From the IMG/VR virus record IMGVR_UViG_3300028862_000012, positions 62,001 through 126,000 of that record: 64,000 nt of DNA; one strand, written 5' to 3'. Position 1 is the first letter of the stretch. The number at the start of each line of letters is the position of its first letter. A program made the translations under genes and the position numbers. Positions 8,695 to 52,089 of the stretch are shown here, in pieces. The notes under the pieces were generated by a model. That model was not told where the DNA came from. It did no database searches and saw nothing but the letters and a program-made list of their open reading frames with translations.

Positions 8695-11055
8695 TTACAC
8701 CTTAAAAATATCTAAGTTAATTTCATTACCAGAAGAAGGAGCTACTATAATTTTTGAACTACTAATTATTGCCTCTCGTATCTCATCTAATTTTTCAAGT
8801 ATTCTATCAATACTAATAGTTGATTTACTATTATTATTTATATTTGTAGAACTTAAATCTTTCTTTGTTGCATAAACATTATCATCAGGAGATATACGAA
8901 CAAAACTTCCATCAGAACGAACAATACCATCATTTATACTTGCTTTAGCTCCACTTGCTGCTTCTCGTTCTTTTTGTTTATCTGTAACATAGCTGGTAAA
9001 ATTAGAAGTTAAATCAGCTTTCTTTTTATCATTAAATAATGACCCTATTAAATCTCCTATGTTAATTTTACCTGAAAATATAAATCCAAATATATTAGAT
9101 AAAAAACTAAAACTATCTTGTATTGGAGTTAAAATATATTTATTAAATAAATCGGGAACAGTTGTGGTAACTTTATTAAATATATCTCCTATAAATTTTC
9201 CTAATGGAGTAAATAAAACAGTCTCAGCCCATTTAGCTACATTCTTTATACCGCCCCAAGCCCGTGTGAAAAATCCACCCAAAGGAGATAATACATAAGT
9301 CGATATCCAAGTACCTATGCTTAAAAAAGCATTACTAATTCCTGATATAGCACGAGTGAAAAACTTTCCAACAGGAACTATCATGTTATTAAATAAAAAT
9401 GACCCTATTAAACCACCCATTTTTACTATATTTTTAATTACTACTTTATATAAAAATAATCCTACTTTTTTTCCAATTCCTTTTATTCCTTCAATCATTT
9501 CACCAATCATAAAAAATTTATAAAACCATTTCCCAGCATTTACAATAAAATTCCCAATAGGTGATATTATATGATCATATATAAAACTTCCAATAAATGA
9601 AAAGAACTTTCCTATAGGGGTTATTATCCACTTATAAGCAAAGCCACCTATAGCATCTAAAGCTTTGGCAATACGCTCTCCACCAATAAAACCAATTATT
9701 CCACCTACTACAGCACCAATTAAACCACCTAAGACTGTACCTACTACTGGAACAAAACTTCCTACTCCTGCACCAATAAGTGCCCATTTTCCCATATTTT
9801 TAAATGCGCCTTTTATTCCCTTATCTGCTCCTCCTAAAAATCCTCCAATAAATCCACTTATTTTAGAGGTCTTCCAGCCTGCAAGCATTCCTTTTATCCC
9901 GTCTATTACCATCATAATAAGACCAGAGATAATCATAGCCTTAGGGCCAGCTTTTCCTAAAAAGTTAGCAAATTCTTTACCAAATAAAGAAGGAAACTTT
10001 TTAGCAAGCAAGTTACCTATATTTTGAAATAGGTTTCCTTTAAATATAACTTCAAAAAGTTTACCAAAAAATCCACCAATTAACGGAAGTAGTTTTTTAC
10101 CTAAGTCTTTTAATCCACCACCAAAGGCAGTACTTAAAAGATTTGAAAAAAATCCACCTTTTTTTTCTTCATCATTTTTTCCTTTTTTTCCTTTTATTAA
10201 ATGATATAATAACAAACTACCCATATCTCCAATTTTAGCAACATCTTTAAGAGTAGGCTTTGTTTTAACTATTTTTTTTGCTTCTGGATCTGGCAGTAAA
10301 TTATTAATTGCTTCTGGAACAAAGGAATGACTTTGACTTGGTTCATCATCAAAATCATCAGGAATTTCTTTCTTTCTAAAAGGTGACCTGCTTGAAGATC
10401 TGTAAGAATCTTTTTTAGAACTGCCTTTCTTTCTATTTTTTATAGCCCCACCGATTTTTTCACCTATATCTATACCAAAACTATCTTCAACGGCAGTAGT
10501 AACTAAACTTAATGGCCCTAATAATGCTCCAGTAAAACCATCTTTATTCTTTTTTACTTGAGAGCCAATGGCTCCCATTACTCCCTTACCACCTGCAAGG
10601 ATGCCCTTTGCTACTGGATTAAGTAAACCTATAACTCCTTTAGTTTCCCACAAGTATTTTCGTGTTTGCTTTTTATCTATTTTTTCTAATCGCTTATCAT
10701 ATATATTTTCTTTCTTTTCAAGTTTTTTTATTTGTTTATTTATCTTTTCTATACTTAAACGTGCCTCAGCAGAGTTAGAAATTTCTAATTCTTTTTTAAA
10801 TAATTTTACTTCATCATTAAGCTCTTTAATTTTCTGATCTGCATTTTTTTTATTAATTATTGTAGCAACTTTCTTCTTATCAGATAAATCCTTTTCAACT
10901 CGGCGTTCAGCTTCTTCCATACGTTTTATACTTTTTTCAGCATCTAATCCAGACTTTCTAATCATTTTAGTAAAAGCGTCTAACCTTTCAGCTAATAGCT
11001 CATTAGTCTGTTCTTGAGTAACTTGATTCTTTTTTAATACTGGAATAAGTGCCAT
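8695..11055 (-). CDS. Tape measure protein
   Basis: 786 aa. Charged coiled-coil N-terminus, Gly-rich hydrophobic core (GAGVGSFVPVVGTVLGGLIGAVVGGIIG), about 11-residue aromatic/Pro repeats, first gene of the baseplate run. Confidence 0.75.
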   Translation of the reverse strand: MALIPVLKKNQVTQEQTNELLAERLDAFTKMIRKSGLDAEKSIKRMEEAERRVEKDLSDKKKVATIINKKNADQKIKELNDEVKLFKKELEISNSAEARLSIEKINKQIKKLEKKENIYDKRLEKIDKKQTRKYLWETKGVIGLLNPVAKGILAGGKGVMGAIGSQVKKNKDGFTGALLGPLSLVTTAVEDSFGIDIGEKIGGAIKNRKKGSSKKDSYRSSSRSPFRKKEIPDDFDDEPSQSHSFVPEAINNLLPDPEAKKIVKTKPTLKDVAKIGDMGSLLLYHLIKGKKGKNDEEKKGGFFSNLLSTAFGGGLKDLGKKLLPLIGGFFGKLFEVIFKGNLFQNIGNLLAKKFPSLFGKEFANFLGKAGPKAMIISGLIMMVIDGIKGMLAGWKTSKISGFIGGFLGGADKGIKGAFKNMGKWALIGAGVGSFVPVVGTVLGGLIGAVVGGIIGFIGGERIAKALDAIGGFAYKWIITPIGKFFSFIGSFIYDHIISPIGNFIVNAGKWFYKFFMIGEMIEGIKGIGKKVGLFLYKVVIKNIVKMGGLIGSFLFNNMIVPVGKFFTRAISGISNAFLSIGTWISTYVLSPLGGFFTRAWGGIKNVAKWAETVLFTPLGKFIGDIFNKVTTTVPDLFNKYILTPIQDSFSFLSNIFGFIFSGKINIGDLIGSLFNDKKKADLTSNFTSYVTDKQKEREAASGAKASINDGIVRSDGSFVRISPDDNVYATKKDLSSTNINNNSKSTISIDRILEKLDEIREAIISSSKIIVAPSSGNEINLDIFKV

Positions 11056-11086
11056 AGAATATAAAATCCTTTAAATATAAAACTAT

Positions 11087-11500
11087 TTATTTTTCTTTAG
11101 CTTTTTCTTTATCATTCTTTGCTTGTAAAATTTCTTTAGCTTTTTCTACTTTATCAACAATAGACTTATCTATATTTTTTCCATTTCTATTGATGAAAAA
11201 TTGTAAAGCTTTTATAGCTCCTGATAAATCATCGTGATTCTTCTCAGCTTCGCTCGCGATTTTTTGTGCAGAACTGTCTTTGAAAAAACCCTCTCCCGGT
11301 TTCCATCCCTTATCTTTTTCTGCATCCTGAATAAATTTTTCATCTTCCTGAAATTTATTCATATGAGACTCTAATAAAGTGGAAACATACTTTTTGTTAG
11401 TTAATTCTGAAAGAATGTTTAAATTAATATTTATAGTTTCAACTATTCTTTTAGCTTCTGATTTGCATACTTCTAATTCAACTTCTTCTAATACTGTCAT
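11087..11500 (-). CDS. Hypothetical protein, candidate internal head protein
   Basis: 137 aa, preceded by TAACTATTA (11521-11529). N-terminal VLEE/LSE/LLES motifs. Confidence 0.55.
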   Translation of the reverse strand: MTVLEEVELEVCKSEAKRIVETININLNILSELTNKKYVSTLLESHMNKFQEDEKFIQDAEKDKGWKPGEGFFKDSSAQKIASEAEKNHDDLSGAIKALQFFINRNGKNIDKSIVDKVEKAKEILQAKNDKEKAKEK

Positions 11501-11641
11501 ACTTACCTACTTACTTACTCTAATAGTTAGTAAATTGATAATAGAAAAATTTATTTATTAAATATTAAAAGACAGATATACCATGAAGAAAACTTTGAGA
11601 TTGAATTTTTTTAAAAAAAAGATGTGCCAAAATTTATTTTA

Positions 11642-13864
11642 TCATCCGGTATCACTATAACAGATATTAAGAGATAATAATGGCCCCCCTATATTTAATA
11701 AAGGCGGTGGGTTTGATTTTGTAATTATAGAATTTTTTTTAGTTATATTAGTATTATTTATATTTTTAGAAACTTTGTGTAAATTACAAGTTTTAGTATT
11801 AAAAAATTTATCTTTGATATGATTATTATTAATAAAAGTATGTAATTTCATTAAACTTATGTATTTATCTGAAATAATAGAATTATAAATTTTATTAAAA
11901 TTTAAATTAATCATTCGAGTATTAGTACTATACATAAAATATAAACTAACAATATCTTTTAAATTTATAGAATTAACATAATTAGTTATAAACTTGGTAT
12001 AGTGAATAACCTTATTATCGAGTATTTTATTAAAATAAATATCATTAGTATAGAAATTTGAGATATCAAGATTATTATGATTAGTAATATTTTTAATGTT
12101 TTTATAATTAGTGCAATAAGTAGAAATAATAAACTTTCTAAAATCAATTCCATTAGTATTTAAATTATGAAAAATTCTAGTTCGAGAAATTTCAGTATAG
12201 CTTGATTGAATATGTTTAATATATTCATTATCTGAATTATATTGTTGTTTAAAGTTTAAAACGCTTTTAATAGTAGCTTGTTTCATAAAAACAGAAGCTA
12301 TATCTTTAAACTCTTTAGATACATAGAAAGCATCAAAGACAGTAATATAGGGTATATGATAATTTTTACAAAACTTTAATATTTCAATGCTATAATAATA
12401 ATCAATTTCTTCATCTATATACCAATTAGATTTCCATAAGAAATTCTTAATAGGTAAAAAGAAACTTTCAATAGAAGAAATTAAATAATCAACAGAGATA
12501 TTAATATTGCCTTTATAAGTGTTAGCATAATCTAAATATTTGTAATAAAGTTTATAATCATGTTTGTGTAATTTAGTATTAGTTTTAATACTTTTTAGAA
12601 AATTAGATTTTCTTATATTTTGTAAATATCTATAACTTGTTTTTGCTAATTCTTCTTTATCGAATTCAGTAGTGAATTTATAACATAGACTATCATGATA
12701 AGGTTTTTTAGCAGTATATCGATCATTGGCTGTATTATATAATCCTAATTCAACTAATTCTTTTTCAATTTTATACTTAAAAGTATTGATATCTGTATTT
12801 ACTGCTGTAATAATAATAGGCTTCAATACAGTATATAAATAGTCAAAAAGTATTTGATCTTGAATATCAAACTTTTTTAATAAATATTTAATAAACTCTT
12901 TGACTGGATGTTTAATATCATCAAAAGTTTTACCTGTATTTATTATATACAATTTATTAATCTTACTTGCAGTCTGATCTAATTCAATCATGTTTTCTGA
13001 TTTAATTATAAGTTCTCGATTTTGTTTACTCATATGAGTTATTTCTGAATATAATCGTCCATGGGAGACAGCATGAGTTATATCATTAACATTTTCATAG
13101 CTTCGAGTATAGTATTTTAGATTATGAGTAAGAGGGAAATTTTTATTATAATTGTTTATATTATCAACGTGCTTATCATGAATAATTTCGTATTTTTCAT
13201 TTTTTGTTTTAATCATACTAACGGGACTATCTAAGCAAGAACTAAATATTTTTTTATAAAAATCACTATACTCTTTAGTACCAAACATAGCGACTATTGA
13301 AATTTTATACAGGCTATCGATTGACTTAATAAAGTCAGCATTCCATTGCTCTAATGGATTTATAGTAACTTGAGACAATACCTTAGTTCCGTCAGGTAGT
13401 AATCCACCTATTTCTAGATTAATTATGTGAAGAAATTGAAGCATATCTTGAGCTATAGTAAAGTTTGCAAAATTATAAATTTCATACTTATGAAATAAAT
13501 TAATATAATATTCTGGTTCTACTACTTTTGTTTGTAGATAATTTGCATCTTTCGGGCGCGGAACATAAATAGAAAATTTATCTTCATCAGTTACTGTGTA
13601 ATTTTTAACTCGTTCAGGATTAGTATGAAATGTTTCAATAATCTTTTTTTTACTATCTAATTGCATTTTAGCTAATACTATTAATAAAGCCATAGAAGTA
13701 ATGCTTTCATTAACGTTTTTTAGAGTAGCAATACTTCTATCATTATTTGCTTTATTAAATAATTTTACCATATAGGGTATATTTGAATTAAATACCTTAT
13801 AGGGTAAAGAGGATTGTAATAGTTCAGGGGTCAATTGATCCCTGTTATATTGAGACATTCGCAT
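11642..13864 (-). CDS. Divergent family-A DNA polymerase / T7-RNAP superfamily (TV-Pol-like) protein
   Basis: Motifs in the expected order: HGRLYSEITHMSKQNR, MIELDQTAS (motif A Asp) and EEID....ILKFCKNYHIPYITVFDAFYV (motif C Asp). Low-complexity Asn/Ile/Lys-rich C-terminus. Confidence 0.6.
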   Translation of the reverse strand: MRMSQYNRDQLTPELLQSSLPYKVFNSNIPYMVKLFNKANNDRSIATLKNVNESITSMALLIVLAKMQLDSKKKIIETFHTNPERVKNYTVTDEDKFSIYVPRPKDANYLQTKVVEPEYYINLFHKYEIYNFANFTIAQDMLQFLHIINLEIGGLLPDGTKVLSQVTINPLEQWNADFIKSIDSLYKISIVAMFGTKEYSDFYKKIFSSCLDSPVSMIKTKNEKYEIIHDKHVDNINNYNKNFPLTHNLKYYTRSYENVNDITHAVSHGRLYSEITHMSKQNRELIIKSENMIELDQTASKINKLYIINTGKTFDDIKHPVKEFIKYLLKKFDIQDQILFDYLYTVLKPIIITAVNTDINTFKYKIEKELVELGLYNTANDRYTAKKPYHDSLCYKFTTEFDKEELAKTSYRYLQNIRKSNFLKSIKTNTKLHKHDYKLYYKYLDYANTYKGNINISVDYLISSIESFFLPIKNFLWKSNWYIDEEIDYYYSIEILKFCKNYHIPYITVFDAFYVSKEFKDIASVFMKQATIKSVLNFKQQYNSDNEYIKHIQSSYTEISRTRIFHNLNTNGIDFRKFIISTYCTNYKNIKNITNHNNLDISNFYTNDIYFNKILDNKVIHYTKFITNYVNSINLKDIVSLYFMYSTNTRMINLNFNKIYNSIISDKYISLMKLHTFINNNHIKDKFFNTKTCNLHKVSKNINNTNITKKNSIITKSNPPPLLNIGGPLLSLNICYSDTG

Positions 13865-13870
13865 ATAAAA

Positions 13871-14326
13871 TTACAGACTTATCTTTGTATAATTCTTTTC
13901 TGTTTTGATATCTGTATTAAATGGATATATCCGAACAATTGAAGTATTGTGTTCAGGATAGAATACCTTAATACTGCTACTGTCGATTATAGTTAAAAAC
14001 TCACTTGCTTTGTCTGTTTTAAACAATAAAAGAATATCATTTATTTCTGATTCAGAAATTGTTGTTATAAACAGTTCGGAATGCTTTGAATAAACTCCAA
14101 TTAAATGATTAGTAAAATCAATAAATTCCAAACCTTTTGGAAAAACTTTAATATTAAACTTTACTTTAATATAATTATTATTCTTTGTAATTCCTACTGT
14201 TAGGGTCTTTCCTACTGCCTTTACAATTTTAGCAATATCTTTTTCAATAGCTGATTCATCGATCATTTCAAAAACTGCATAAAAACAATGAGGGTTACGA
14301 AAGGGGATAATCTTTTTTGAATCCAT
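13871..14326 (-). CDS. Hypothetical protein
   Basis: 151-aa ORF with an AAGGA SD. Confidence 0.6.
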   Translation of the reverse strand: MDSKKIIPFRNPHCFYAVFEMIDESAIEKDIAKIVKAVGKTLTVGITKNNNYIKVKFNIKVFPKGLEFIDFTNHLIGVYSKHSELFITTISESEINDILLLFKTDKASEFLTIIDSSSIKVFYPEHNTSIVRIYPFNTDIKTEKNYTKISL

Positions 14327-14338
14327 ATAATTTCCTTT

Positions 14339-14779
14339 TTATATTTTGAATATATTATGTTGTATTTTAGAAACTTTGTCAATAACTGAACTAAATAAAT
14401 CAGTCTTTTTTTCATCTTTTTTCATTGCATCTTTATAAAAGGAATATTTTTCTAAATCTTCTTCAATATTTTCTAATAAATGTATTTCGTTTTCTTCAAC
14501 CATTATTATAAATTGCTTAAAGCTTTTAGTATACTCTTGTATATTAGTAACTTTTGGAGCTAATTCAGCAATATATTGTGGAACATCATATCTATCTACT
14601 AATTCAGAGTTATTGACATCATTGATAGAAATAGAATAGTATTGTTCTGATATTGGTTTACAAATCAATATATAGATATTTGAATCATGTTTAATGGTTA
14701 GTTCCAAAGCTGGAGATTTGTCTTTTTTGCTATTTCTTTCTAAAGCTAGTAATAAAGCTTTATTTTTATTTTTTGCCAT
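14339..14779 (-). CDS. Hypothetical protein
   Basis: 146-aa ORF. The ATG lies 4 nt after a TAACTATAG element. Confidence 0.6.
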   Translation of the reverse strand: MAKNKNKALLLALERNSKKDKSPALELTIKHDSNIYILICKPISEQYYSISINDVNNSELVDRYDVPQYIAELAPKVTNIQEYTKSFKQFIIMVEENEIHLLENIEEDLEKYSFYKDAMKKDEKKTDLFSSVIDKVSKIQHNIFKI

Positions 14780-16716: not shown

Positions 16717-17244
16717 ATGGAAAATTTTACAGAAGAGTTGTACAAAAAAGAGTTAACAAAAAAGCTTCATAACTTTGCATCTAAACTACCTATCTTTGAT
16801 TTAGACGTAAAAGTAGCAGGGAATTACATTTATTATTCTTCATTAGTATGCAATCTCATTGGAAAGAAACTTGAGATTGATTATAGCTTAACAGAAAAAA
16901 TGAATGTGCGCCGATTGAAAGAAATTTTAATTGATTTCTTCCCCGTACTTTATGGTTATGAAGAAAAAGAAAAGTCTGTTGATGATCTTTTAAAAGGTGA
17001 GATTTCAGAAGAAACAATTTTGAGTAAAAGCATTGTCAAGCGAGATATGTATCAGGTAGAACGAAAGCTTGATCCCTATAATGAAATTATTGTTCGTAAT
17101 CTTGATACTAATGAACTTGAAATGTACAAGATGGAATGTCCTTTAGTATTTTTCTTATCAGATATGTTTAGAGATAAGGATTTAGCATCAGCTACTTTTA
17201 AGGATAAAGCAAAGTTTATTAAAATTTTGGAACAAAGAGCATAA
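16717..17244 (+). CDS. Hypothetical protein
   Basis: 175-aa ORF followed by a terminator. Confidence 0.6.
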   Translation: MENFTEELYKKELTKKLHNFASKLPIFDLDVKVAGNYIYYSSLVCNLIGKKLEIDYSLTEKMNVRRLKEILIDFFPVLYGYEEKEKSVDDLLKGEISEETILSKSIVKRDMYQVERKLDPYNEIIVRNLDTNELEMYKMECPLVFFLSDMFRDKDLASATFKDKAKFIKILEQRA

Positions 17245-19968: not shown

Positions 19969-20706
19969 ATGGGAAATGGGAAAGCATATGCCAATCGAAA
20001 ACAAGAATCAGAACGTCCAGAGGCAGATTTTTATAGTACACCAAAATCAATAACACAATTAATTTGTGATACAAAAGAGTTTTCTAAATATAAAACAATA
20101 TATGAACCTATGTCTGGAGAGAATGCTATAGCAAAAGTTCTTATAGAAAATGGCCATGAAGTTATTACTGATGATATTAGAACTACAAAAAAGGATTTTC
20201 TTAAATGTAATGAAAAAGTGGATTATATATGTACAAATCCAGCTTTCAGCATCTTTACTGAAACAGTAGAAAAATGTCATGAAATTACTAATTATGGGTT
20301 TACATTATTAGGTAAGACTAATTTTTTTGCGGCTCATAGTAGAACCAAAATGAATCTATGGAGAAATCTTAAACATGTTTATATTTTTGATCGCATGATT
20401 GACTATCGTACCCCTTATAGGGAAGATGGATGCTTCTTTTTAGGTAATTTAGTAACGTGTTGGATGTGTTTTGATAAATCATGGCATGAACCTTATTGGA
20501 ATACATCAATTATGGACGTGCAAAAATGGGCTACTTTAGGAAGTTATGATAATTATATCAAAAAAGAATATTACAAAGTTCATAATAAATGTCCTGTTTG
20601 TAATACAGAATTAAAGTTCAAGCAGAAGCAGAAAGATTTTCCCGATTTACAAAGCATTAACTGTAGTACTTGTAACTGGGAAGGAATAGTAGATAAATTA
20701 ATTTAG
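19969..20706 (+). CDS. DNA amino-methyltransferase with C-terminal zinc ribbon
   Basis: DFYSTP (motif X), YEPMSGENAI (motif I) and TNPAF (NPPF-like motif IV). CPVC...CSTC at the C-terminus. Confidence 0.75.
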   Translation: MGNGKAYANRKQESERPEADFYSTPKSITQLICDTKEFSKYKTIYEPMSGENAIAKVLIENGHEVITDDIRTTKKDFLKCNEKVDYICTNPAFSIFTETVEKCHEITNYGFTLLGKTNFFAAHSRTKMNLWRNLKHVYIFDRMIDYRTPYREDGCFFLGNLVTCWMCFDKSWHEPYWNTSIMDVQKWATLGSYDNYIKKEYYKVHNKCPVCNTELKFKQKQKDFPDLQSINCSTCNWEGIVDKLI

Positions 20707-26528: not shown

Positions 26529-26543
26529 ACTAACTATTATAGT

Positions 26544-27956
26544 GTGCATAGCACATTTAATAACGCCATAGGCAAAGTAAAGGAAACAAGTATGGAAAAA
26601 GCAATGTCTCGAAAGGATCTGTTTAAAAAACTTAAAGCAGAAAAAGAAGAAGCAAACACCAATTTTCAGGGTTTTGAAAATCCTGAATATGTAGCACTAT
26701 CAGACGATGAATATCGTTTAATTAGGCTCATGGGAAATGAGTTGCAGTCAAAGGATCACTGTCCTACTGATGCACATTTATTCAAGACTATTTTTATTAA
26801 GGGTGATGATGGAAAGAAGATGAAAACTATTCTTAATCCAGACAGGGATCATCCATTTAATAAGATGGTATACTTTTTAGGTAAGGGTAAATGGATTGAT
26901 GATGAAAATACTGGAAAGAAAAAGAAAGTCTATGATCACGAGGGAAGCCCGTCTCTTGCTATCATGAATAGTAATTATCATGATGATGGCCCGTATCCTC
27001 AGTCATGGGACTCTCCGCAGAAGTATGTAGCTATTAATTGTATTGATCGTATGGATGATTGGTGTAAAACTAATAATCATACTAAGGTACTGATTCACAG
27101 TGTAAATGTTGATGGTGATAAAGTTTATCCTGAAATTGGAATTAAAAAGACCTTGTATGATATAATTTGGGAACAACTTTGTACCGAATATGAATTACAT
27201 TTTGAAGATTTTGATATTGCAGTAAAGCGTATTCCAACTTCAAAGGATAAGTCTAAAAAGCAGACTGTTTACTTTAAGGCTGTTCGTGCTGATCGTGCTG
27301 AAAAGGATTTGATTGAGTTTGGCAATAAGATTGGTGTTGACTATGCCTCTCGAATTGTAGCTGAAGGCGCTCCGACCGACGCTGAGTATGCATATGAACA
27401 GTATAACTTTGAAACAATGCCTTGCTTTCTGCCTACTTCTGCAAAACGTTTATATAATCACATTAAGAACTTTGTGAAGAAAGTTGATACAGAGTTTGGT
27501 TCCGATTATGTAGGCGATTTTACCGCTTATATTGAAAAAGAAGAAGCAGAGCGTAAGATTTTTTGGGCAGAGTATAAGAAAGCTCATGCAACAGAAGAAT
27601 CAGAAGATAAAGTAACTAAGCCAGCAAGCAAGGAAACTACTTCAAAAGAAACTACTGTTTCTAAGGAGTCTGTTCGCCGGTCTGTTGTGAAAAAGGAAGA
27701 GCCAAAGAAGGAAGAGCCAGCTTTTGATACTTCAGAGCTTGATCCTGAAATTTATACTGGTATTAGTAAAATGTCTGATGAAGATAAGGCACTGATTATT
27801 GGTGTAGATGAGGATTCAGGAGAGCTTAAATTCCGTGCTGACTGCCAGCTTGTAGAGTGTGCTAATAATAATGGCCCTGATGATGAAGAAGGCTGTCACT
27901 TTATGACTCCTTCTACTTATACTATTTGCCCATATTGTGCCGCCGAGTTTCAGTAA
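26544..27956 (+). CDS. Single-stranded DNA-binding protein, T4 gp32-like, with C-terminal zinc ribbon
   Basis: YRLIRLMG, YVAINCIDR and DFDIAVKR patterns. Acidic/Lys low-complexity linker and terminal CHF...CPYC. The start may be GTG 26544 or a later ATG. Confidence 0.65.
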   Translation: MHSTFNNAIGKVKETSMEKAMSRKDLFKKLKAEKEEANTNFQGFENPEYVALSDDEYRLIRLMGNELQSKDHCPTDAHLFKTIFIKGDDGKKMKTILNPDRDHPFNKMVYFLGKGKWIDDENTGKKKKVYDHEGSPSLAIMNSNYHDDGPYPQSWDSPQKYVAINCIDRMDDWCKTNNHTKVLIHSVNVDGDKVYPEIGIKKTLYDIIWEQLCTEYELHFEDFDIAVKRIPTSKDKSKKQTVYFKAVRADRAEKDLIEFGNKIGVDYASRIVAEGAPTDAEYAYEQYNFETMPCFLPTSAKRLYNHIKNFVKKVDTEFGSDYVGDFTAYIEKEEAERKIFWAEYKKAHATEESEDKVTKPASKETTSKETTVSKESVRRSVVKKEEPKKEEPAFDTSELDPEIYTGISKMSDEDKALIIGVDEDSGELKFRADCQLVECANNNGPDDEEGCHFMTPSTYTICPYCAAEFQ

Positions 27957-32012: not shown

Positions 32013-34214
32013 ATGATTAAAAAAGGACAAACATTAAAATTATCTTTAGCTACTTTATCAAGGCATAAAAAGCGATATGAGGTTTTAGGTTATAATATAA
32101 ATAAGATTAAGGAAGATAATCCTAATATCCCACTAAATGATATTTACTTAGATATTCCTGCTGAGTTCATACACTCTTCTGGATCTGATTTACCTTTATA
32201 TATGATTTGTGATTTTTGTAATCAGGAATATGAAACTACTTGGAGAAAATATACTAAACTACCGCAAGGGAAGGATGCATGTAATTCTTGTAAAGAATTA
32301 AAAAGAACAAATACTTGTATAGAAAAATATGGAGTAACTAATGTTTTTCAAGAGTTTTCTGTTAAAGAAAAAAGTAAAATAACTTGTTTAGAAAAATATG
32401 GTGTTGAACATGCTATTCAAAATAAAGAAATAATGAATAAAGCAGAAAATAATAAAAAAGTATCTAATAAGAAAAAATATGGTGTTGAGAGTGTATTTAG
32501 CTTATCTTCAGTACAACAAAAATCAAAAGAAACTAATTTAGAAAGATATGGATGTGAATATTCCTGTCAAAATAAAGATATAATAGCTAAAAGATGTCTT
32601 ACAGTAAAAGAAAAATATTCTGATCCTGTTGAGATTAAGAAGGTTTCAGACAAGTTAAAAAATACTATGATGAAAAGATATGGATATACTTCTGCTTTAA
32701 AAAATCCTGAAATATTAGCTAAGAAAACACAAACTATGTTTGATTTATATGGAGAAATAGGCTCTGAAGCAAGAAAAGAATTAGAAGAAAAACGAAAACA
32801 ATCGAATATAGAAAAATATGGTGTAGAGTATCTGCTTCAAAATAAAGAACTTGGAGAAAAAGCAAAGGTAAATAGAAAAGCTTATCTTATGAAAGAGTAT
32901 GGAGTAACTAATAATCTTATTATACCAGAAGTAAAAGAAAAAATAAAGCAAAAGAATATAGAAAAATATGGTGTAGACAGTCCTTTTAAGCTTCCTACTT
33001 TTCAAGAAAAGATTAGACAAATAAATATATTAAAATATGGCACTCCCTATCCTATGCAAAATTCAGAAGTGCGAAGAAAAGTATTTAAGCATAAAGGAAA
33101 GTCAGTACCTGAGTCTAAGTTTGAAGAGATGTTAAAAAATAGAGGCTTTATTTATAAATATGAACTTAATACAAATGGAAAATGCTTTGATTTTACTATT
33201 TATAATATAGATATGACAATAAATACAATTGTAGAAATTGATGGCGAATATAATCATGGACTAAAAAATGATTCAGATGGTTTTCATGTTCATGGAGAAA
33301 AAGATTGTGAACGATTTCAAAAAGTCCCAGATGGAGTTAAATATATAGTATGTAATTCCCTTAACATAGAAGAAGGTTTTTCACAGTTATGCTCAAACTT
33401 TGATGTCAATTATAGTGCTTGGATAAAAGAAATAATTGATGCATGTAATGTTGATTTTCCATATCCTGAATATTCTATTGAGCGTATGAAAAAAGAATAT
33501 AATAAATTAGCTGTTGCAGATTATAAACATAATTCATATGTAGGTCAGTCTATTATTAAGAATTTTCATAAATCAATTTATATTGCTCATGTATCTAATA
33601 AACCGTCCCCAGTTGAAGCTTGGAAGAATTCAGAGTTATTAAAAAAATGTATTGAAAATAGATTTATTTATGCAAACACACTAAGTTCTCAATCTATAGC
33701 TGATGGATTTAATGTTTGTAAAATAGCACCAAAAGTTTCTGTGTTTAGAGCTATTCTAGCGCGCGAGCTAATATTAAAATATTTAAATCAATATGACACA
33801 ATTTTTGATCCTTTTTCTGGATTTAGCGGTCGTATGTTAGGAACAACTTGTTTAAATAAAAAATATATTGGACAAGATATAAACAATACTTTTGTAAAAG
33901 AAAGTAATGAAATCATTAATTTTTTAAACTTAAATGCAAGTGTTTTAGAAAAAGATATTTTTGAAAGCTATGGAGAATATGACTGTTTATTTACTTGTTC
34001 TCCTTATAATTTAAAAGAAACATGGAATAACAGTAATCAAAAAAATCTAAGTTGCGATGAATGGATTGATATATGTTTATCTCATTTTAAATGTAAGTCA
34101 TATTTATTTGTAGTTGATGAAACTATTAAGTATAAAGATTACATTGTAGAGGAAATAAAAAATACAAGCCATTTTGGAAGAAATATAGAAAAAGTTATTC
34201 TTATAAGAAAATAA
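32013..34214 (+). CDS. Homing-endonuclease-like protein (Zn domain, EKYGV repeats, Vsr/DUF559-type PD-(D/E)xK nuclease) fused to a DNA amino-methyltransferase
   Basis: CDFC...CNSC, about 8 xxEKYGVx repeats, KSVPE...FDF...IVEIDGEYNHG nuclease, then IFDPFSGFSGRMLG (motif I) and LFTCSPY (motif IV variant). Confidence 0.75.
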   Translation: MIKKGQTLKLSLATLSRHKKRYEVLGYNINKIKEDNPNIPLNDIYLDIPAEFIHSSGSDLPLYMICDFCNQEYETTWRKYTKLPQGKDACNSCKELKRTNTCIEKYGVTNVFQEFSVKEKSKITCLEKYGVEHAIQNKEIMNKAENNKKVSNKKKYGVESVFSLSSVQQKSKETNLERYGCEYSCQNKDIIAKRCLTVKEKYSDPVEIKKVSDKLKNTMMKRYGYTSALKNPEILAKKTQTMFDLYGEIGSEARKELEEKRKQSNIEKYGVEYLLQNKELGEKAKVNRKAYLMKEYGVTNNLIIPEVKEKIKQKNIEKYGVDSPFKLPTFQEKIRQINILKYGTPYPMQNSEVRRKVFKHKGKSVPESKFEEMLKNRGFIYKYELNTNGKCFDFTIYNIDMTINTIVEIDGEYNHGLKNDSDGFHVHGEKDCERFQKVPDGVKYIVCNSLNIEEGFSQLCSNFDVNYSAWIKEIIDACNVDFPYPEYSIERMKKEYNKLAVADYKHNSYVGQSIIKNFHKSIYIAHVSNKPSPVEAWKNSELLKKCIENRFIYANTLSSQSIADGFNVCKIAPKVSVFRAILARELILKYLNQYDTIFDPFSGFSGRMLGTTCLNKKYIGQDINNTFVKESNEIINFLNLNASVLEKDIFESYGEYDCLFTCSPYNLKETWNNSNQKNLSCDEWIDICLSHFKCKSYLFVVDETIKYKDYIVEEIKNTSHFGRNIEKVILIRK

Positions 34215-38420: not shown

Positions 38421-40184
38421 ATGATAGATTACAATCAAGTTGTAAATGTTAGTTTACATTCAATTTTAAATAAAAGAGTTTATTATGAAAAACAAGGATT
38501 TAATGTAGACAACTTAAAACTCAAAGTAAATGAATTAACATGCAGAACTTATACAAATAAAGATTATTCTAATGTATCTATTGAAATGCCTTTATGTAAA
38601 GTATTTCCATCAGCAAGTTCACAAATTAAAGTAAAAGTAGTATGTGATTATTGCCACACTGAATATGAAACTATGTATATGATAGTATTATCTCGTTCTG
38701 GTAAAAATTGTTGTAAAAATTGTATTCACGCTAAGTCTGCTGAAAGCTTAAAGAAAGAATTTGGTGTAACAAATGTGTCTCAATTAGACTCTATAAAGTT
38801 AAAGAAAAAAGAATTAAGCTTACAGAAGTTTGGAACAATAACCCCATTACAAAATAAAGAGATTAAAGAAAAAATAGTTAAAACAAACATAGAAAAATAT
38901 GGTGTTAAATATGCATCTATGCTAAAAGAAAAAGTAGATTATACTAAAGAAGCATGGAAAAATAAAACAGAAGAGGAACTATCTGACATAAGGTATAGAC
39001 GAGACAAAACTTGGTTATTAAATAGAGGATTTTTAGAAGAGACTTTAGCTCAGGCTGAAAAAGATAAAGTTTCCTTTACTGAAATTAAAAGAAACTTTAA
39101 TAGAAAAGTTAGTTATTCTACTTTAAGTAATTTTGCTATATCTCAAAACTTTTCTATACTCACTTCATTTGAAGAGTTTAAATCTTTTATTTATGAAAAA
39201 GGTAAGACAATCAGATTTAAGTGTAATACTTGTGATACTGAATTTTTTCAGTATATGAATTATGGATTTGTATCAGATGATAGTAGAATTGAATGTCCTA
39301 AATGTCCTTCTGCTATTGGAAGTCGCGAAGAAAATGAAGTTCTTGATTATATTAAATCTATTTATTTTAATGAAATTATTCATAGCTATAAATTAATTAA
39401 TAGAAAAGAAATAGATATAGTTATTCCAGAATTCAATTTAGGAATAGAATATAATGGATCATATTGGCATAATGATAAGTTTCGCGGAAAATATTATCAT
39501 ATAGAAAAATACAATTCAGCTAAAGAAGAAAAAATAGACCTTATTTTTATTAATGATTTTGAATGGAAGTATAAGCAGGATATAGTTAAATCAATTATAA
39601 AGAATAGATTAAAGATAGTCGATAAACGACTATATGCTCGTAAGGGAATTATTAGCTTAGTTGATTCATCTACTGCTAAAGAATTTTTCTATGTTAATCA
39701 TATTCAGGGTAGTAAAAGTATAAACTCTAAAATGATTTCTATTGGATTATACATAGATTCTGAACTTGTTTCTTTAGTAAGTTTTAATAAAACAAAGTAT
39801 AGAAAAGATTATGAATATGATTTAGTACGTTATGCAAATAAATTAGGCTATCAAGTTATAGGCGGGTTTAGTAAAATACTTTCGTTTTTTGAAAAAGCTT
39901 ATAAACCATCAAGTATAGTAACCTTTTCTGAAATACGGTTGTTTAAGTCCTCTGTTTATGAAAAAGCAGGGTTTACTTTAGACCATATTACCAGACCAAA
40001 TTACTTTTATACAAAAAATAATATATTTGCTGGTTCTCGTCAAAACTTTCAAAAAAGTAAGTTAAAGAAATTATTTGATGATTATACTGACTCTAAAACA
40101 GAAAGTGAAATGATGGCAGAACATAATTACGATAAAATTTGGGATTGCGGAGTACGAGTTTTTGTAAAAAAGTATCAAAAGTAA
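38421..40184 (+). CDS. Hef-like homing endonuclease (Zn domain, repeats, PD-(D/E)xK nuclease, C-terminal GNAT-like domain)
   Basis: GSREENEV...EIDIVIPEFNLGIEYNGSYWH, NHIQG, IGGFSKIL..F and YEKAGF...PNY form the Hef-like pattern of T4-like phages. Confidence 0.75.
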   Translation: MIDYNQVVNVSLHSILNKRVYYEKQGFNVDNLKLKVNELTCRTYTNKDYSNVSIEMPLCKVFPSASSQIKVKVVCDYCHTEYETMYMIVLSRSGKNCCKNCIHAKSAESLKKEFGVTNVSQLDSIKLKKKELSLQKFGTITPLQNKEIKEKIVKTNIEKYGVKYASMLKEKVDYTKEAWKNKTEEELSDIRYRRDKTWLLNRGFLEETLAQAEKDKVSFTEIKRNFNRKVSYSTLSNFAISQNFSILTSFEEFKSFIYEKGKTIRFKCNTCDTEFFQYMNYGFVSDDSRIECPKCPSAIGSREENEVLDYIKSIYFNEIIHSYKLINRKEIDIVIPEFNLGIEYNGSYWHNDKFRGKYYHIEKYNSAKEEKIDLIFINDFEWKYKQDIVKSIIKNRLKIVDKRLYARKGIISLVDSSTAKEFFYVNHIQGSKSINSKMISIGLYIDSELVSLVSFNKTKYRKDYEYDLVRYANKLGYQVIGGFSKILSFFEKAYKPSSIVTFSEIRLFKSSVYEKAGFTLDHITRPNYFYTKNNIFAGSRQNFQKSKLKKLFDDYTDSKTESEMMAEHNYDKIWDCGVRVFVKKYQK

Positions 40185-46523: not shown

Positions 46524-46556
46524 TAATAGCCTTGCTAGTCTGATAACTATTAGTAT

Positions 46557-47126
46557 ATGGAAAGTTATCAGACTAGAATAAGCAGACATTTAAGACCATT
46601 AAAAAAACGTTTACATGATAATTATATGAATAGAATAGGGCTTGATCTAGAGTTATTTGCTTTATCTATTGAAAATAATAGTCATGATGATGAAGTAAAA
46701 ATTGATTTAACCAATACAAAAAAGATATTAGGATTTATAAAATATCCCGAAGATGAAATTCCTATTTCAAATAGTTATAACAATAACAATAATTCTATGA
46801 GTTTTCATATGTATGACATATTACCTATAGAGTTTTATTGTAAATGGGAAGATAAAATAAAAATAAGTGATATTATAATTCAAAAAATTATAATGCCTGA
46901 TGACAGTGTTAAAGCAATGATACTGCAAGTAGTTGATTTAATAGCTCGTGCAGATACCGATTTTATGTTTGCAAAATATATAGTAGCTCCTTATACTTTT
47001 AACTTAAAGAATACTTCACACATGGAAATAAAAAATGAAATAGAAAAGTACTTAAAAGAGCCAGTAATAGTAAATAGTACTATAGAGCTTACTGCAAATT
47101 TAACTCCTGAACCTGATGAATATTAA
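46557..47126 (+). CDS. Head closure / neck protein (gp14-like, tentative)
   Basis: TAACTATTA-N4-ATG. Beta-rich with a KIKISDIII...LQVVD...YIVAP pattern. Confidence 0.4.
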   Translation: MESYQTRISRHLRPLKKRLHDNYMNRIGLDLELFALSIENNSHDDEVKIDLTNTKKILGFIKYPEDEIPISNSYNNNNNSMSFHMYDILPIEFYCKWEDKIKISDIIIQKIIMPDDSVKAMILQVVDLIARADTDFMFAKYIVAPYTFNLKNTSHMEIKNEIEKYLKEPVIVNSTIELTANLTPEPDEY

Positions 47127-52014: not shown

Positions 52015-52089
52015 TAATATCTTATAAAAAAAGTAACTATTATAATACGAAGATATAAAATTTTTGATTAAGTTATAGGATGGAAAATA

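What the first reader, a model, noticed from the sequence alone, without database searches (positions are those of the whole stretch)
11642..13864. Orphan family-A / T7-RNAP-like polymerase, possibly the enzyme behind the TAACTATTA promoters or a replication initiator
Seen: GRLY (about 13049-13060) followed by xxxR...ELD-x-x-AS (about 12970-12985), and EEID...IL...IPYITVFDAFYV (about 12320-12400). Known: these correspond to the RGRxY/GRL element and catalytic motifs A and C of the right-hand superfamily containing family-A DNA polymerases, T7-like RNA polymerases and the divergent TV-Pol family. Both catalytic Asp are present, but motif C reads VFD instead of the usual VHD. There is no exonuclease domain and the C-terminal ~190 aa are low-complexity. 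Inference: a T4-like phage is not expected to carry this enzyme. Two hypotheses are (a) a primase or initiator acting near the AT-rich 11.5-12.3 kb region, and (b) a single-subunit RNAP recognising the 9-nt element, as T7-like mitochondrial RNAPs do with a nonanucleotide. No gp55-like sigma factor is visible in this window, though it may lie elsewhere.
Basis: partly seen in the sequence, partly recalled or inferred. Interest (0 to 1): 0.8.

Follow-up and report, generated by a model that had tools for sequence, protein, structure and literature searches.

The report
Minimal family-A polymerase in jumbo phage
A peat-soil jumbo phage carries an intact gene for a stripped-down relative of DNA polymerase I and T7 RNA polymerase from a very rare family; it is probably an active polymerase, but the tools could not show whether it makes DNA or RNA.

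Summary
They are not chance. The motif A and motif C aspartates, a Lys in a motif-B-like helix and an Arg are invariant across 20 homologues.

The family is tiny: 6 cluster representatives among 1.84 billion. Profile comparison links its core (residues 217-535) to divPolA2, a diverged phage PolA described in 2024 and never assayed (hhalign 98% probability, E 3.6e-14). AlphaFold models match divPolA2 proteins significantly. Among solved structures they match almost only family-A DNA polymerases, and each of those matches is weak.

There is no exonuclease domain. The N-terminal domain is family-specific and possibly winged-helix. The F in motif C is common in divPolA2.

Function is unresolved. 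Some motifs resemble single-subunit RNA polymerases. The motif-B Arg and Tyr, invariant in the seven T7-like RNAPs compared and near-invariant in the six phage PolAs, are missing. Relatives sit beside recombinases in integrative elements, as TV-Pol and CcPol primases do.

TAACTATTA is a real promoter-like element, conserved in a diverged relative. I saw no sigma factor, RNA polymerase or replicative DNA polymerase in the 70% of the genome inspected.

My favoured reading, held weakly, is an accessory initiating polymerase. The RNA polymerase reading stays open.

The parts
11642..13864 (-). Intact 740-aa ORF (P0001): a minimal family-A-type polymerase remotely related to divPolA2.
   Evidence: ORF. 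Only 5 homologous cluster representatives in 1.84 billion. hhalign to divPolA2 gives E 3.6e-14. AF2 models. Foldseek.
13220..13864 (-). Family-specific N-terminal domain (residues 1-215), not alignable to the divPolA2 N-terminal domain. Residues ~107-168 (window 13361-13546) have a helix-helix-helix-beta-beta pattern compatible with a winged helix.
   Evidence: AF2 secondary structure and pLDDT 70-90. The hhalign match to divPolA2 starts only at residue 217. The nearest Atlas structures are RepA, DnaD_N, HTH_36 and MarR-type proteins at TM 0.32-0.42, which is a lead only.
13049..13060 (-). G269-R270-L271-Y272, a beta-hairpin carrying the conserved Arg. It corresponds to TGRLS in Pol I and DxRGRxY in T7-like RNA polymerases.
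   Evidence: R270 and Y272 are invariant in the family. G and Y are nearly invariant across 20 sequences. The seven T7-like RNA polymerases compared read D[WFS]RGR[VLFY]Y.
13016..13027 (-). K280...R283, conserved basic residues between the hairpin and motif A.
   Evidence: Invariant in the family. R283 is invariant across 20 sequences that include divPolA2.
12956..12985 (-). Motif A: E294-L-D296-Q-T-A-S-K-I-N303. A beta-strand ends in the catalytic Asp. There is no Glu at the steric-gate position D+5.
   Evidence: E294, D296 and N303 are invariant. D296 is invariant across 20 sequences. Strand 292-296 is seen in both AF2 models. The pattern matches DGSC[SN]G[IL]Q of single-subunit RNA polymerases better than the D[AIG][SA][GS][LC][EQ]xR of the six phage PolAs compared.
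12797..12835 (-). Motif-B-like (O-helix-like) segment Y344-x3-K348-x3-I352-x3-N356. The Lys is kept. The canonical Arg (K-4) and Tyr (K+8) are replaced by Tyr and Asn.
   Evidence: K348 is invariant across 20 sequences. Helix 337-356 appears in the AF2 model. divPolA2 has RxxxKx7[N/Y] at the aligned position. T7 RNA polymerase has RxxxKx7YG and T7 DNA polymerase RxxAKx7YG.
12500..12736 (-). Family-specific insertion in the fingers (about residues 377-455). It is absent from divPolA2 and modelled with low confidence.
   Evidence: The gap in the divPolA2 rows of alignment A4. pLDDT below 50 for core residues 158-203.
12320..12421 (-). Pre-motif-C helix (I483-D-E-E-I-D488) and motif C (I504-P-Y-I-T-V-F-D511-A-F-Y-V515). 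A beta-hairpin carries the second catalytic Asp.
   Evidence: D511, A512 and V515 are invariant. D511 is invariant across 20 sequences. hhalign aligns D511 with D654 (VHDE) of T7 DNA polymerase and D812 (IHDS) of T7 RNA polymerase. The hairpin at 508-516 appears in the AF2 models.
11924..12229 (-). C-terminal helical extension (residues 546-647), partly conserved within the family (for example NDIYFN and YVNS).
   Evidence: Alignments. AF2 pLDDT 60-85.
11645..11923 (-). Asn/Ile/Lys-rich low-confidence tail (residues 648-740). It contains a short proline-containing P[LF] motif shared by 5 of 6 members, and a terminal Y-S-D-T (window 11648-11659) shared with the closest relative.
   Evidence: pLDDT below 50. 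C-terminal alignment blocks. A role as a docking motif is my inference only.
13871..14779 (-). Two small co-oriented upstream genes (151 aa and 146 aa), syntenic with the polymerase gene in the relative phage. Probably one transcription unit with it, and with no TAACTATTA upstream.
   Evidence: ORFs. Synteny: w146 matches a127 at 46% identity and w151 matches a149 at E 0.004. The same order is seen in L038. Motif positions.
11521..11529 (-). A TAACTATTA copy immediately downstream of the polymerase gene, 20 nt upstream of the next gene (11087-11500). It marks the start of the tail/baseplate gene run.
   Evidence: The same motif sits at the same relative position in the 35%-identical relative's contig (L001 position 3029).

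Best explanation
The ORF encodes a probably active nucleotide polymerase of the family-A (Pol I / T7 RNA polymerase) superfamily, reduced to palm and fingers.

Shown:
- Both metal-binding Asp (D296, D511), the hairpin Arg (R270) and the O-helix Lys (K348) are conserved.
- No exonuclease domain was detected.
- The catalytic core is homologous to divPolA2, the diverged accessory PolA of barbaviruses, ICP1 and related phages.
- This protein's family is separate and much rarer. It has its own N-terminal domain, a fingers insertion and a C-terminal extension.

Inferred:
- It is not the replicative polymerase. It most likely acts as an accessory polymerase that starts nucleic-acid synthesis at particular DNA sites, a primase-polymerase in the manner proposed for TV-Pol and shown for CcPol-MP.
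- The N-terminal, possibly winged-helix, domain would supply DNA binding.
- The conserved C-terminal peptide may dock it to a partner.
- It appears to be expressed apart from the TAACTATTA-driven genes.

Whether the product is DNA or RNA is not decided by the sequence.
For: Fold and family:
- hhalign of the family against divPolA2: 98.2% probability, E 3.6e-14, 249 columns.
- Foldseek of the full model against BFVD: six divPolA2-type proteins at E 1.5e-5 to 7e-4, probability 1.0.
- Core model (pLDDT 77.8, pTM 0.73) against PDB: 49 of the top 50 are family-A DNA polymerases, best KlenTaq at E 0.045 and probability 0.87.
- hhalign places D511 on D654 of T7 DNA polymerase and D812 of T7 RNA polymerase. 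For divPolA2, all three motifs are collinear with T7 DNA polymerase.

Likely activity:
- Catalytic and nucleic-acid-contacting residues are invariant across 20 sequences of 15-39% identity.
- The gene is kept in the same position in a phage whose proteins are only 35-46% identical.

Accessory or initiator role:
- Relatives lie beside a tyrosine integrase (P0003), and beside a serine recombinase plus SSB (P0004). This is the context described for TV-Pol (PMC2579912) and for PolA-SSB primases (PMC10061031).
- The N-terminal domain is nearest to RepA, DnaD_N and HTH_36 models.
- The genome has its own DnaB-type helicase, a helicase-loader-like ATPase and a clamp loader. This suggests a separate processive replicase, although none has been seen yet.
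- Yutin et al. likewise judged divPolA2 not to be the replicase (PMC11348598).
Against: - No biochemical data exist for this family or for divPolA2.
- The canonical O-helix Arg and Tyr are missing (Y344, N356), so catalysis may be unusual or weak.
- In this phage the gene is next to no helicase, SSB or recombinase. It heads a tail and baseplate gene run.
- The winged-helix and Rep resemblance has TM below 0.5.
- Every match to a solved structure has E above 0.04.
- Membership in TV-Pol was not tested with TV-Pol sequences.
- The motif A and GRxY signatures look more like RNA polymerases than DNA polymerases.
- No canonical primase or replicative polymerase has been seen in this genome, so 'accessory' is an assumption.
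Confidence: 0.4

Rival explanations
1. It is a minimal single-subunit DNA-dependent RNA polymerase. Host RNA polymerase would transcribe it early, and it would then transcribe the many genes preceded by TAACTATTA. This would replace the gp55-type late system of T4-like phages.
For: - GR[LI]Y and D-x-[TS]-[AS]-S-x-[IL]-N match the single-subunit RNA polymerase signatures DxRGRxY and DGSC[SN]G[IL]Q better than the phage PolA signatures do.
- There is no conserved Glu steric gate at D+5.
- TAACTATTA occurs 23 times against 4.1 expected, mostly upstream of co-oriented genes. It is conserved at the same position in a 35-46% diverged relative that also has the polymerase.
- The T4 late motif TATAAATA is not enriched: 32 against 29.5 expected.
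- The polymerase operon itself has no TAACTATTA upstream.
- No gp55 or sigma factor, and no other RNA polymerase, was seen in 70% of the genome.
Against: - The motif-B Arg and Tyr (R627 and Y639 in T7) are invariant in the seven T7-like RNA polymerases compared and are absent here.
- The HSxD element before motif C reads Q/E-x-I-D.
- There is no Pfam RNA_pol hit.
- No RNA polymerase is in the top 50 PDB matches of the core model.
- No homologue of the T7 N-terminal promoter-binding domain or specificity loop was found.
- Family members occur in an ordinary-looking Spirochaetales prophage and in recombinase-linked elements that lack the motif.
- The phage has a clamp loader, so a clamp-dependent gp55/gp33-type late system remains plausible. 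Small divergent sigma-like proteins would easily have been missed.
- 30% of the genome is unseen.
Confidence: 0.2
2. It is a primer-dependent accessory DNA polymerase for repair, gap filling or lesion bypass, possibly tethered to a sliding clamp through its C-terminal peptide.
For: - The top matches to solved structures are all DNA polymerases.
- Many divPolA2 relatives keep a Glu at the steric-gate position, as DNA polymerases do.
- A clamp loader is encoded.
- A short proline-containing motif lies near the C-terminus in 5 of 6 members.
- Yutin et al. list repair as one option (PMC11348598).
Against: - This family itself lacks the steric-gate Glu and the O-helix Arg and Tyr that matter for dNTP binding and fidelity.
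- The clamp-binding idea is untested pattern matching.
- The gene is not next to any repair gene.
Confidence: 0.15
3. It is a decayed or co-opted polymerase-like protein without polymerase activity. It might be a DNA-binding regulator or a structural or ejected protein encoded at the head of the tail module.
For: - His to Phe in motif C in this protein, and loss of the O-helix Arg and Tyr in the family.
- Position next to tape-measure-like and baseplate genes.
- Low GC (0.21) and a GC skew unlike the other minus-strand genes.
- Rice 2023 describes RRM-only 'Pol' remnants that have lost their catalytic Asp (PMC10061031).
Against: - Both catalytic Asp and the Lys are invariant over very divergent sequences.
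- F or Y at the motif C His position is widespread in divPolA2.
- A promoter-like TAACTATTA separates the gene from the tail genes.
Confidence: 0.1

Closest known systems
divPolA2 (Yutin et al. 2024, Virol J 21:200, PMC11348598). Examples: Vibrio phage 1.063.O AUR84708, Rheinheimera Barba phages, Aeromonas phage 4L372D, Vibrio phage ICP1.
   Same: The palm and fingers core is homologous (hhalign E 3.6e-14; Foldseek E 1.5e-5). Both share GGRxY, K..R, the motif A Asp, DP(Y), the motif B Lys with Asn or Tyr at +8, and [HFY]D in motif C. Neither has an exonuclease domain or a recognisable thumb. Both are phage-encoded and biochemically uncharacterised.
   Different: Identity is only 15-19% over the core. 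The N-terminal domains do not align. This family is about 300 aa longer, with an 80-aa fingers insertion and a 200-aa C-terminal extension. It has YxxxK where divPolA2 has RxxxK. It lacks the steric-gate Glu kept by many divPolA2 proteins. It is extremely rare (6 cluster representatives), whereas divPolA2 occurs in 266 phage records.
TV-Pol family (Iyer, Abhiman & Aravind 2008, PMC2579912), including CcPol of SCCmec (the CcPol-MP primase; Bebel 2020, as summarised in Rice 2023, PMC10061031).
   Same: Both are minimal family-A catalytic cores without a nuclease domain. Both have a beta-hairpin Arg and two catalytic Asp. Some members have an extra N-terminal helical domain. Both occur in phages and in elements next to resolvase or integrase genes (P0003, P0004).
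   Different: The RxxxK of the TV-Pol fingers reads YxxxK here. No D5-type helicase neighbour or fusion was seen. No adjacent OB-fold partner followed by a helicase was seen, unlike CcPol-MP. I made no direct sequence or profile comparison with TV-Pol members.
T7-like and mitochondrial single-subunit RNA polymerases (Pfam PF00940).
   Same: Same superfamily. They share GRxY after the hairpin Arg, the S-x-[IL]-[QN] pattern after the motif A Asp, and HD in motif C of the relatives. Weak structural matches to mitochondrial and T7 RNA polymerases appear for the full model.
   Different: Here the hairpin Arg and motif A are 26 residues apart, against 112 in T7. The motif-B Arg and Tyr are missing. 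There is no HSxD. No N-terminal promoter-binding domain or specificity loop was detected. There is no Pfam hit. The core is about half the size.
Bacterial and phage DNA polymerase I (KlenTaq, Klenow, apicoplast Pol, T7 gp5).
   Same: These are the best matches among solved structures for palm and fingers. Motif C, and for divPolA2 also motifs A and B, are collinear with T7 gp5.
   Different: Here there is no 3'-5' exonuclease domain, no thumb homologue, no DYSQIELR-type motif A with a steric-gate Glu, no RxxxKxxxFxxxYG, and HDA or FDA in place of HDE. Each structural E-value is above 0.04.

Membership tests
Family-A polymerase superfamily (Pol I / T7 RNAP / TV-Pol) | Motif A: a catalytic Asp at the end of a beta-strand. 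| tested here: met
   D296 is invariant in 20 sequences. It lies at the end of strand 292-296 in both AF2 models.
Family-A polymerase superfamily (Pol I / T7 RNAP / TV-Pol) | Motif C: a second catalytic Asp in a beta-hairpin ([HF]D). | tested here: met
   D511 is invariant. hhalign aligns it to D654 of T7 DNA polymerase and D812 of T7 RNA polymerase. The hairpin at 508-516 is seen.
Family-A polymerase superfamily (Pol I / T7 RNAP / TV-Pol) | Motif B / O-helix: RxxxKxxx[FM]xxxY. | tested here: inconclusive
   K348 is invariant, but the Arg is replaced by Y344 and the Tyr by N356. divPolA2 has RxxxKx7[N/Y].
Family-A polymerase superfamily (Pol I / T7 RNAP / TV-Pol) | Palm and fingers fold similar to solved family-A structures. 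| tested here: inconclusive
   49 of the top 50 PDB matches are family-A DNA polymerases. The best is E 0.045, probability 0.87, TM 0.32. None is significant alone. I could not read model coordinates, so the Asp-Asp distance was not measured.
divPolA2 | Detectable sequence homology of the catalytic core to divPolA2 proteins. | tested here: met
   hhalign 98.2% probability, E 3.6e-14. Foldseek against BFVD gives E 1.5e-5 to 7e-4.
divPolA2 | The divPolA2 N-terminal globular domain and an overall length of about 430-555 aa. | tested here: not met
   The profile alignment starts at query residue 217 and divPolA2 residue 164, so the N-terminal domains are not aligned. Members of this family are 499-740 aa with extra insertions.
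divPolA2 | Encoded in addition to a regular replicative DNA polymerase. | tested here: inconclusive
   No PolA, PolB or PolC was found in contig 62-219 kb. 30% of the genome is unseen. A clamp loader and a DnaB-type helicase are present.
TV-Pol | A beta-hairpin Arg plus two catalytic Asp in a minimal core without a nuclease domain. | tested here: met
   R270, D296 and D511. No exonuclease domain hit.
TV-Pol | [quoted passage not shown] | tested here: not met
   YxxxK in 5 of 6 members. P0005 has R at K-3.
TV-Pol | Linkage to a D5-like helicase or to resolvase, integrase or transposase genes. | tested here: inconclusive
   Not in this phage. Relatives P0003 and P0004 lie next to an integrase and to a serine recombinase plus SSB.
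TV-Pol | Profile-level sequence similarity to bona fide TV-Pol members. | not tested
T7-like single-subunit RNA polymerase (PF00940) | Match to Pfam RNA_pol, or a profile match to T7-like RNA polymerases. | tested here: not met
   No Pfam hit for any member. hhalign to a 7-member RNA polymerase profile gives E 0.14-0.23, over the motif C region only.
T7-like single-subunit RNA polymerase (PF00940) | Motif B Arg, Lys and Tyr (R627, K631, Y639) and His784. | tested here: not met
   Only the Lys is present. Asn replaces the Tyr, and Q/E-x-I-D replaces HSxD.
T7-like single-subunit RNA polymerase (PF00940) | T/DxxGR-x-Y motif, and the motif A pattern DxSxSGxQ. | tested here: inconclusive
   GR[LI]Y and D-x-[TAS]-[AS]-S-x-[IL]-N resemble them, but the leading T/D and the Gly are absent.
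T7-like single-subunit RNA polymerase (PF00940) | Promoter-specific RNA synthesis. | not testable with these tools
   This needs biochemistry or 5'-end RNA mapping. No RNA run was listed for this phage.
PolA-SSB (CcPol-MP type) primase | An operon of Pol, a small OB-fold SSB and a helicase, next to a large serine recombinase. | tested here: not met
   The window neighbours are 146-, 151- and 137-aa proteins with no SSB or OB-fold hit and no helicase. In L007 the SSB and the recombinase are convergent with the Pol gene, not in an operon with it.

The most novel reading that the evidence does not exclude
The protein, and by extension divPolA2-like proteins, is a new and much reduced class of single-subunit RNA polymerase. 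In this T4-like jumbo phage it would read a 9-nt promoter (TAACTATTA) and take over the role of the gp55 late system. An Asn would replace the Tyr that every known single-subunit RNA polymerase uses at the nucleotide-selection position.
Probability: 0.17. Interest if true: 0.9.

Novelty: new variant of a known kind. Interest (0 to 1): 0.6.

Why it matters
Family-A polymerases reduced to palm and fingers (TV-Pol, CcPol, divPolA1 and divPolA2) are turning up as accessory enzymes of phages and mobile elements. Only CcPol has been assayed.

This protein defines a further lineage, about 600-740 aa long and very rare. It keeps the catalytic residues but changes the O-helix Arg and Tyr, which normally bind and select the incoming nucleotide. 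It is therefore a natural test of what those positions are needed for.

It sits in a 224-kb T4-like phage with two unusual features. A strongly over-represented 9-nt promoter-like element replaces the usual T4 late motif. No sigma factor, RNA polymerase or replicative DNA polymerase has yet been recognised in 70% of the genome.

If the enzyme proved to be the RNA polymerase for that element, it would be the smallest single-subunit RNA polymerase known and a useful tool enzyme. If it is a primase-polymerase, it would carry the CcPol-type priming mechanism beyond Bacillota islands into large lytic phages.

Tried and rejected
- Direct sequence searches found nothing. Pfam, PHROGs, PDB phmmer and hmmsearch, and tblastn against 50,697 phage records gave no match for the protein or its family profile.
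- The word-indexed 5.8-billion-protein search returned only the protein itself and one relative, even with a profile.
- Degenerate-pattern scans added only a second contig of the same relative phage. This covers viral, metagenome and genome collections. The 6-sequence alignment was too divergent to seed a scan.
- Foldseek of the full-length model against PDB gave no significant match. A core-only model built on a deeper alignment improved the ranking but not the significance.
- hhalign against small home-made T7-like RNA polymerase and phage PolA profiles gave only weak local matches, E 0.003-0.23. It cannot rank RNA polymerase against DNA polymerase affinity.
- The gp55 candidate suggested by T4 gene order, the 175-aa ORF upstream of the gp47-like gene at 16717-17244, had no hit in PHROGs, in tblastn or in the Atlas.
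- I tried to fetch more of the genome, or relatives, through an extended promoter 15-mer. It returned mostly unrelated contigs. The loci with several TAACTATTA copies (L102, L060) share no tblastx similarity with the window.
- Transcript 5'-end mapping was not possible, because no RNA run was listed.
- I rejected the idea that the 'AT-rich 11.5-12.3 kb region' is an origin. It is the coding 3' end of the gene plus a 140-bp spacer carrying a TAACTATTA copy.
- I rejected the idea that the gene is a recent mobile insertion in this phage. The three-gene block and both flanks are syntenic in a relative with 35-46% protein identity.


Full report
THE OBSERVATION

Window 11642-13864 (-) is a single intact ORF of 740 aa.
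- G269-R-L-Y272 lies at 13049-13060.
- I293-E-L-D296-Q-T-A-S300 lies at about 12965-12988.
- Y482-IDEEIDYYY...IPYITVFD511AFYV515 lies at 12320-12421.

Pfam, PHROGs, PDB sequence search and tblastn against 50,697 phage records all find nothing, so the description 'orphan' is understandable.

The window is contig positions 62,004-126,003 of a 223,865-bp viral contig from a peat metagenome (IMG/VR UViG_3300028862_000012). Overall G+C is about 28%. The contig is a very distant T4-like myovirus. It has a gp6-like baseplate wedge, tail sheath and tube, SbcCD-like gp46/47, NrdD/G, a dNMP kinase and several methyltransferases.

THE FAMILY

An exhaustive phmmer search of 1.84 billion cluster representatives returned six proteins: the query and five others.
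- P0002: 37% identity, E 8.6e-91.
- P0003: E 1.8e-38.
- P0004: E 4.8e-11.
- P0005: E 6.3e-9.
- P0006: E 4.9e-4.

In their alignment the invariant residues are R270, Y272, K280, R283, E294, D296, N303, G311, F469, D511, A512 and V515. All five relatives read IHDA at motif C. Only the query has F in place of H.

P0002 comes from a related phage. Its contigs L001 and L038 show the same gene order as the window: a 146-aa gene, a ~150-aa gene, the polymerase, then a tape-measure-like gene. On the other side of L038 they show the same divergent SLT-like, 361-aa and 175-aa genes. Neighbour identities are 40-46%. The gene is therefore a stable component of this phage lineage and not a recent insertion.

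The other members lie elsewhere.
- P0003 is next to a tyrosine-integrase-like gene.
- P0004 is next to a serine recombinase and an SSB.
- P0005 is in a prophage of a Spirochaetales MAG, between the HNH/terminase block and the prophage end.

LINK TO KNOWN POLYMERASES

A full-length AlphaFold2 model (pLDDT 66, with the core at 70-90) gave no significant PDB match. Its top 11 matches were nevertheless all family-A DNA polymerases, followed by mitochondrial and T7 RNA polymerases.

Against predicted viral structures it matched a set of ~430-aa phage proteins at E 1.5e-5 to 7e-4 and probability 1.0. They include Aeromonas phages 4L372D and 2L372X, and Rheinheimera phage Barba31A, annotated 'DNA polymerase'. 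These are the divPolA2 proteins of Yutin et al. 2024 (PMC11348598). The authors describe a diverged PolA with an apparently active palm, no homologous thumb, no exonuclease, an N-terminal domain of unknown affinity and a variable gene neighbourhood. They suggest either a repair DNA polymerase or an RNA polymerase.

I collected 11 divPolA2 proteins from annotated phages, including two alternative forms in Vibrio phage ICP1. Profile-profile comparison with the query family gave 98.2% probability, E 3.6e-14, over 249 columns. Query residues 217-535 align to divPolA2 residues 164-428. The N-terminal domains do not align.

In a joint 20-sequence core alignment, R283, D296, P320, K348 and D511 are invariant. 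F or Y at the motif C His position is common among divPolA2 proteins.

A core-only model built on that alignment was better (pLDDT 77.8, pTM 0.73). Against PDB, 49 of its top 50 matches were family-A DNA polymerases: KlenTaq, apicoplast Pol, Pol theta, Bst and Klenow. The best was E 0.045, probability 0.87, TM about 0.3. Each match is individually non-significant, and none was an RNA polymerase.

hhalign against small profiles that I built from seven T7-like RNA polymerases and six phage PolAs gave weak matches that nevertheless fall at the expected motifs. D511 aligns to D654 (VHDE) of T7 DNA polymerase and to D812 (IHDS) of T7 RNA polymerase. For divPolA2, motifs A, B and C are collinear with T7 gp5 at E 0.003.

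I conclude, with about 0.85-0.9 confidence, that the protein is a member of the family-A superfamily and a remote relative of divPolA2. That topology is a strand ending in D296, then the helical fingers, then a hairpin with D511 at its turn.

ANATOMY

- Residues 1-215: a family-specific domain. Its helix-helix-helix-beta-beta segment (107-168) and its nearest Atlas structures (IncFII RepA, DnaD_N, HTH_36, MarR; TM 0.32-0.42) hint at a winged helix. This is only a lead.
- Residues 225-545: palm and fingers, with an ~80-residue family-specific insertion.
- Residues 546-647: a helical extension conserved within the family.
- Residues 648-740: an Asn/Ile/Lys-rich, low-confidence tail. A short P[LF]-containing motif is shared by five of six members, and the terminal YSDT is shared with P0002.

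DNA OR RNA?

The motifs point in different directions.
- Like RNA polymerases: GR[LI]Y, compared with DxRGRxY. The phage PolAs read [TS]x[RG]R-x-[TRK]H.
- Like RNA polymerases: motif A reads D-x-[TAS]-[AS]-S-x-[IL]-N, compared with DGSC[SN]G[IL]Q. There is no Glu at the steric-gate position, although many divPolA2 proteins keep one.
- Unlike both: the O-helix keeps only the Lys. The Arg becomes Tyr, and the Tyr (Y639 in T7 RNA polymerase, Y526 in T7 DNA polymerase) becomes Asn.
- Unlike both: the residue after HD is Ala, neither the Glu of DNA polymerases nor the Ser/Asp of RNA polymerases.
- The structure matches favour DNA polymerases.

No decision is possible from sequence.

THE TAACTATTA ELEMENT

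The element occurs 23 times against 4.1 expected, and none of 100 shuffles reached that number. Nineteen copies are on the + strand. Fourteen of these lie within 60 nt upstream of the next co-oriented ORF, including the sheath, tube-like and many unannotated genes. The other five lie inside ORFs or further upstream. Two of the four minus-strand copies precede minus-strand genes.

Only weak extra conservation flanks it: no T at -1, then [T/G]A.T downstream. There is no -35-like element.

One copy lies just downstream of the polymerase gene, and the relative's contig has the same 9-mer at the same place. The T4 late motif TATAAATA is not enriched, at 32 against 29.5 expected. The polymerase operon has no copy upstream.

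The element is therefore very likely a phage-specific promoter of single-element type. This architecture fits a gp55-type factor as well as it fits a mitochondrial- or T7-type enzyme. Transcript ends could not be examined, because no RNA run was listed.

THE REST OF THE GENOME

Using the remaining look-ups I walked from the window's right end to contig position 219,142. Together with the window this covers 70% of the genome.

Present:
- a DnaB-type helicase
- an IstB/DnaC-like ATPase
- an NAD-dependent ligase
- a 5'-3' exonuclease/RNase H
- a gp44-like clamp loader
- RNA ligases
- ThyX
- a SAM lyase

Not seen: any sigma or gp55-like factor, any single- or multi-subunit RNA polymerase, any PolA, PolB or PolC replicase, or a DnaG primase.

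The search has clear limits. Beyond the window it relied on precomputed Pfam hits and on PHROGs scans of 28 selected ORFs. Small divergent proteins such as gp55 and gp33 would be easy to miss. Contig positions 1-62 kb and 219-224 kb were not seen. The clamp loader suggests a clamp and a processive replicase exist somewhere, and it keeps a clamp-dependent late-transcription system plausible.

INTERPRETATION

The best-supported statement is that this is a probably active, minimal family-A polymerase of a new and very rare lineage related to divPolA2. For its role I weakly favour (about 0.4) an accessory, site-directed initiating polymerase of the TV-Pol/CcPol kind. The reasons are:
- the contexts of the non-phage relatives;
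- the precedent of CcPol-MP (PMC10061031; TV-Pol in PMC2579912);
- the DNA-polymerase-like structure matches;
- the possible Rep-like DNA-binding domain.

The other readings, with my estimates:
- RNA polymerase for TAACTATTA: about 0.2. The failure to find a sigma factor and the RNA-polymerase-like motifs keep it alive. The missing motif-B Arg and Tyr and the distribution of the family weigh against it.
- Primer-dependent repair DNA polymerase: about 0.15.
- Inactive derivative: about 0.1.

NOVELTY

The general kind is known: diverged minimal PolA in phages and mobile elements, that is divPolA2 and TV-Pol. This lineage differs in its domain architecture and in its O-helix residues. I rate it a new variant of a known kind and of moderate to high interest, mainly because the whole group lacks any assigned activity and because of the unresolved link to the unusual promoter element.

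Noticed in passing
window, 23 sites (for example 52034-52042, 54464-54472, 11521-11529 on the minus strand); L001:3029-3037: TAACTATTA is over-represented 5.6-fold (23 against 4.1 expected). Most copies lie just upstream of co-oriented genes. One copy is conserved in position in a relative phage with 35-46% protein identity. The T4 late motif TATAAATA is not enriched (32 against 29.5). It is probably the phage's own single-element promoter.
   Followed up: partly
window 26531-26546, 46544-46559, 54464-54479: In three cases a start codon (GTG at 26544, ATG at 46557, ATG at 54477) follows the motif after exactly 4 nt. If these starts are real, the mRNAs would be leaderless or nearly so, which constrains where transcription can begin relative to the motif.
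   Followed up: no
window 47898-50126 (+): The anaerobic ribonucleotide reductase NrdD carries a weak intein-splicing-domain match at residues 399-442, just before the main NRDD match. It may be intein-containing. NrdG-like 47434-47901 lies upstream.
   Followed up: no
window 57272-58063 and 58382-59191 (+): Two adjacent ORFs match consecutive parts of the same DNA helicase family (phrog_62 positions 691-829 and 920-1129), with a 320-bp gap between them. This may be a split or interrupted helicase gene.
   Followed up: no
window 38421-40184 and 32013-34214 (+): There are two DUF7487 / homing-endonuclease-like proteins (phrog_3339 at E 1.6e-101). The second is fused to an N6/N4 DNA methylase domain. 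Several further methyltransferases are nearby (19969-20706, 59432-60199, 60210-60908).
   Followed up: no
window 11000-14000: The polymerase gene region has the lowest G+C in the window (0.21 at 12-13 kb) and a slightly positive GC skew, unlike the other minus-strand genes (-0.1 to -0.39). The minimum of the cumulative GC skew falls at about 11-12 kb, roughly 3 kb before the switch of coding strand at 14.8 kb.
   Followed up: no
P0001 residues ~715-740 (window 11645-11720) and the C-termini of P0002-P0006: Five of six family members share a short proline-containing P[LF] motif near the C-terminus (PPPLL, FLPF, EYPL, QPLPL, DPPL). P0001 and P0002 also share a terminal YSDT after an unconserved linker. 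This could be a docking peptide, for example for a clamp. That is speculation only.
   Followed up: no
L164:10680-13557 (contig about 171.2-174.1 kb) and L161:12071-13276: Outside the window the phage encodes proteins with weak Csf1 and Csf3 (type IV CRISPR-Cas) Pfam hits. It also encodes a PAPS-reductase-like protein, a TnpB/Cas12f-like IS605 OrfB, a 743-aa ART-PolyVal protein and a SAM lyase.
   Followed up: no
L012:6001-7305 compared with L021:247-1914 (Vibrio phage ICP1 isolates): ICP1 isolates carry alternative divPolA2 forms at the same locus. One is 434 aa. The other is the 555-aa gp100, which comes with gp98, gp99 and gp101. The locus is a few kb from the CRISPR-Cas region. Variation of this sort in ICP1 is usually associated with accessory or conflict genes.
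   Followed up: no
L008:11842-15736 (Spirochaetales MAG prophage): The family member P0005 sits on the opposite strand to its neighbours, near the end of a prophage. It lies next to a 644-aa FG-GAP-repeat protein and a 281-aa C-terminal RecQ fragment, so the prophage may have inserted into recQ.
   Followed up: no
window 8695-11055 (-): A 786-aa protein downstream of the polymerase has a coiled-coil N-terminus and long Gly-rich hydrophobic repeats. It is 40% identical to its counterpart in the relative phage and is probably the tape measure or an ejection protein.
   Followed up: no
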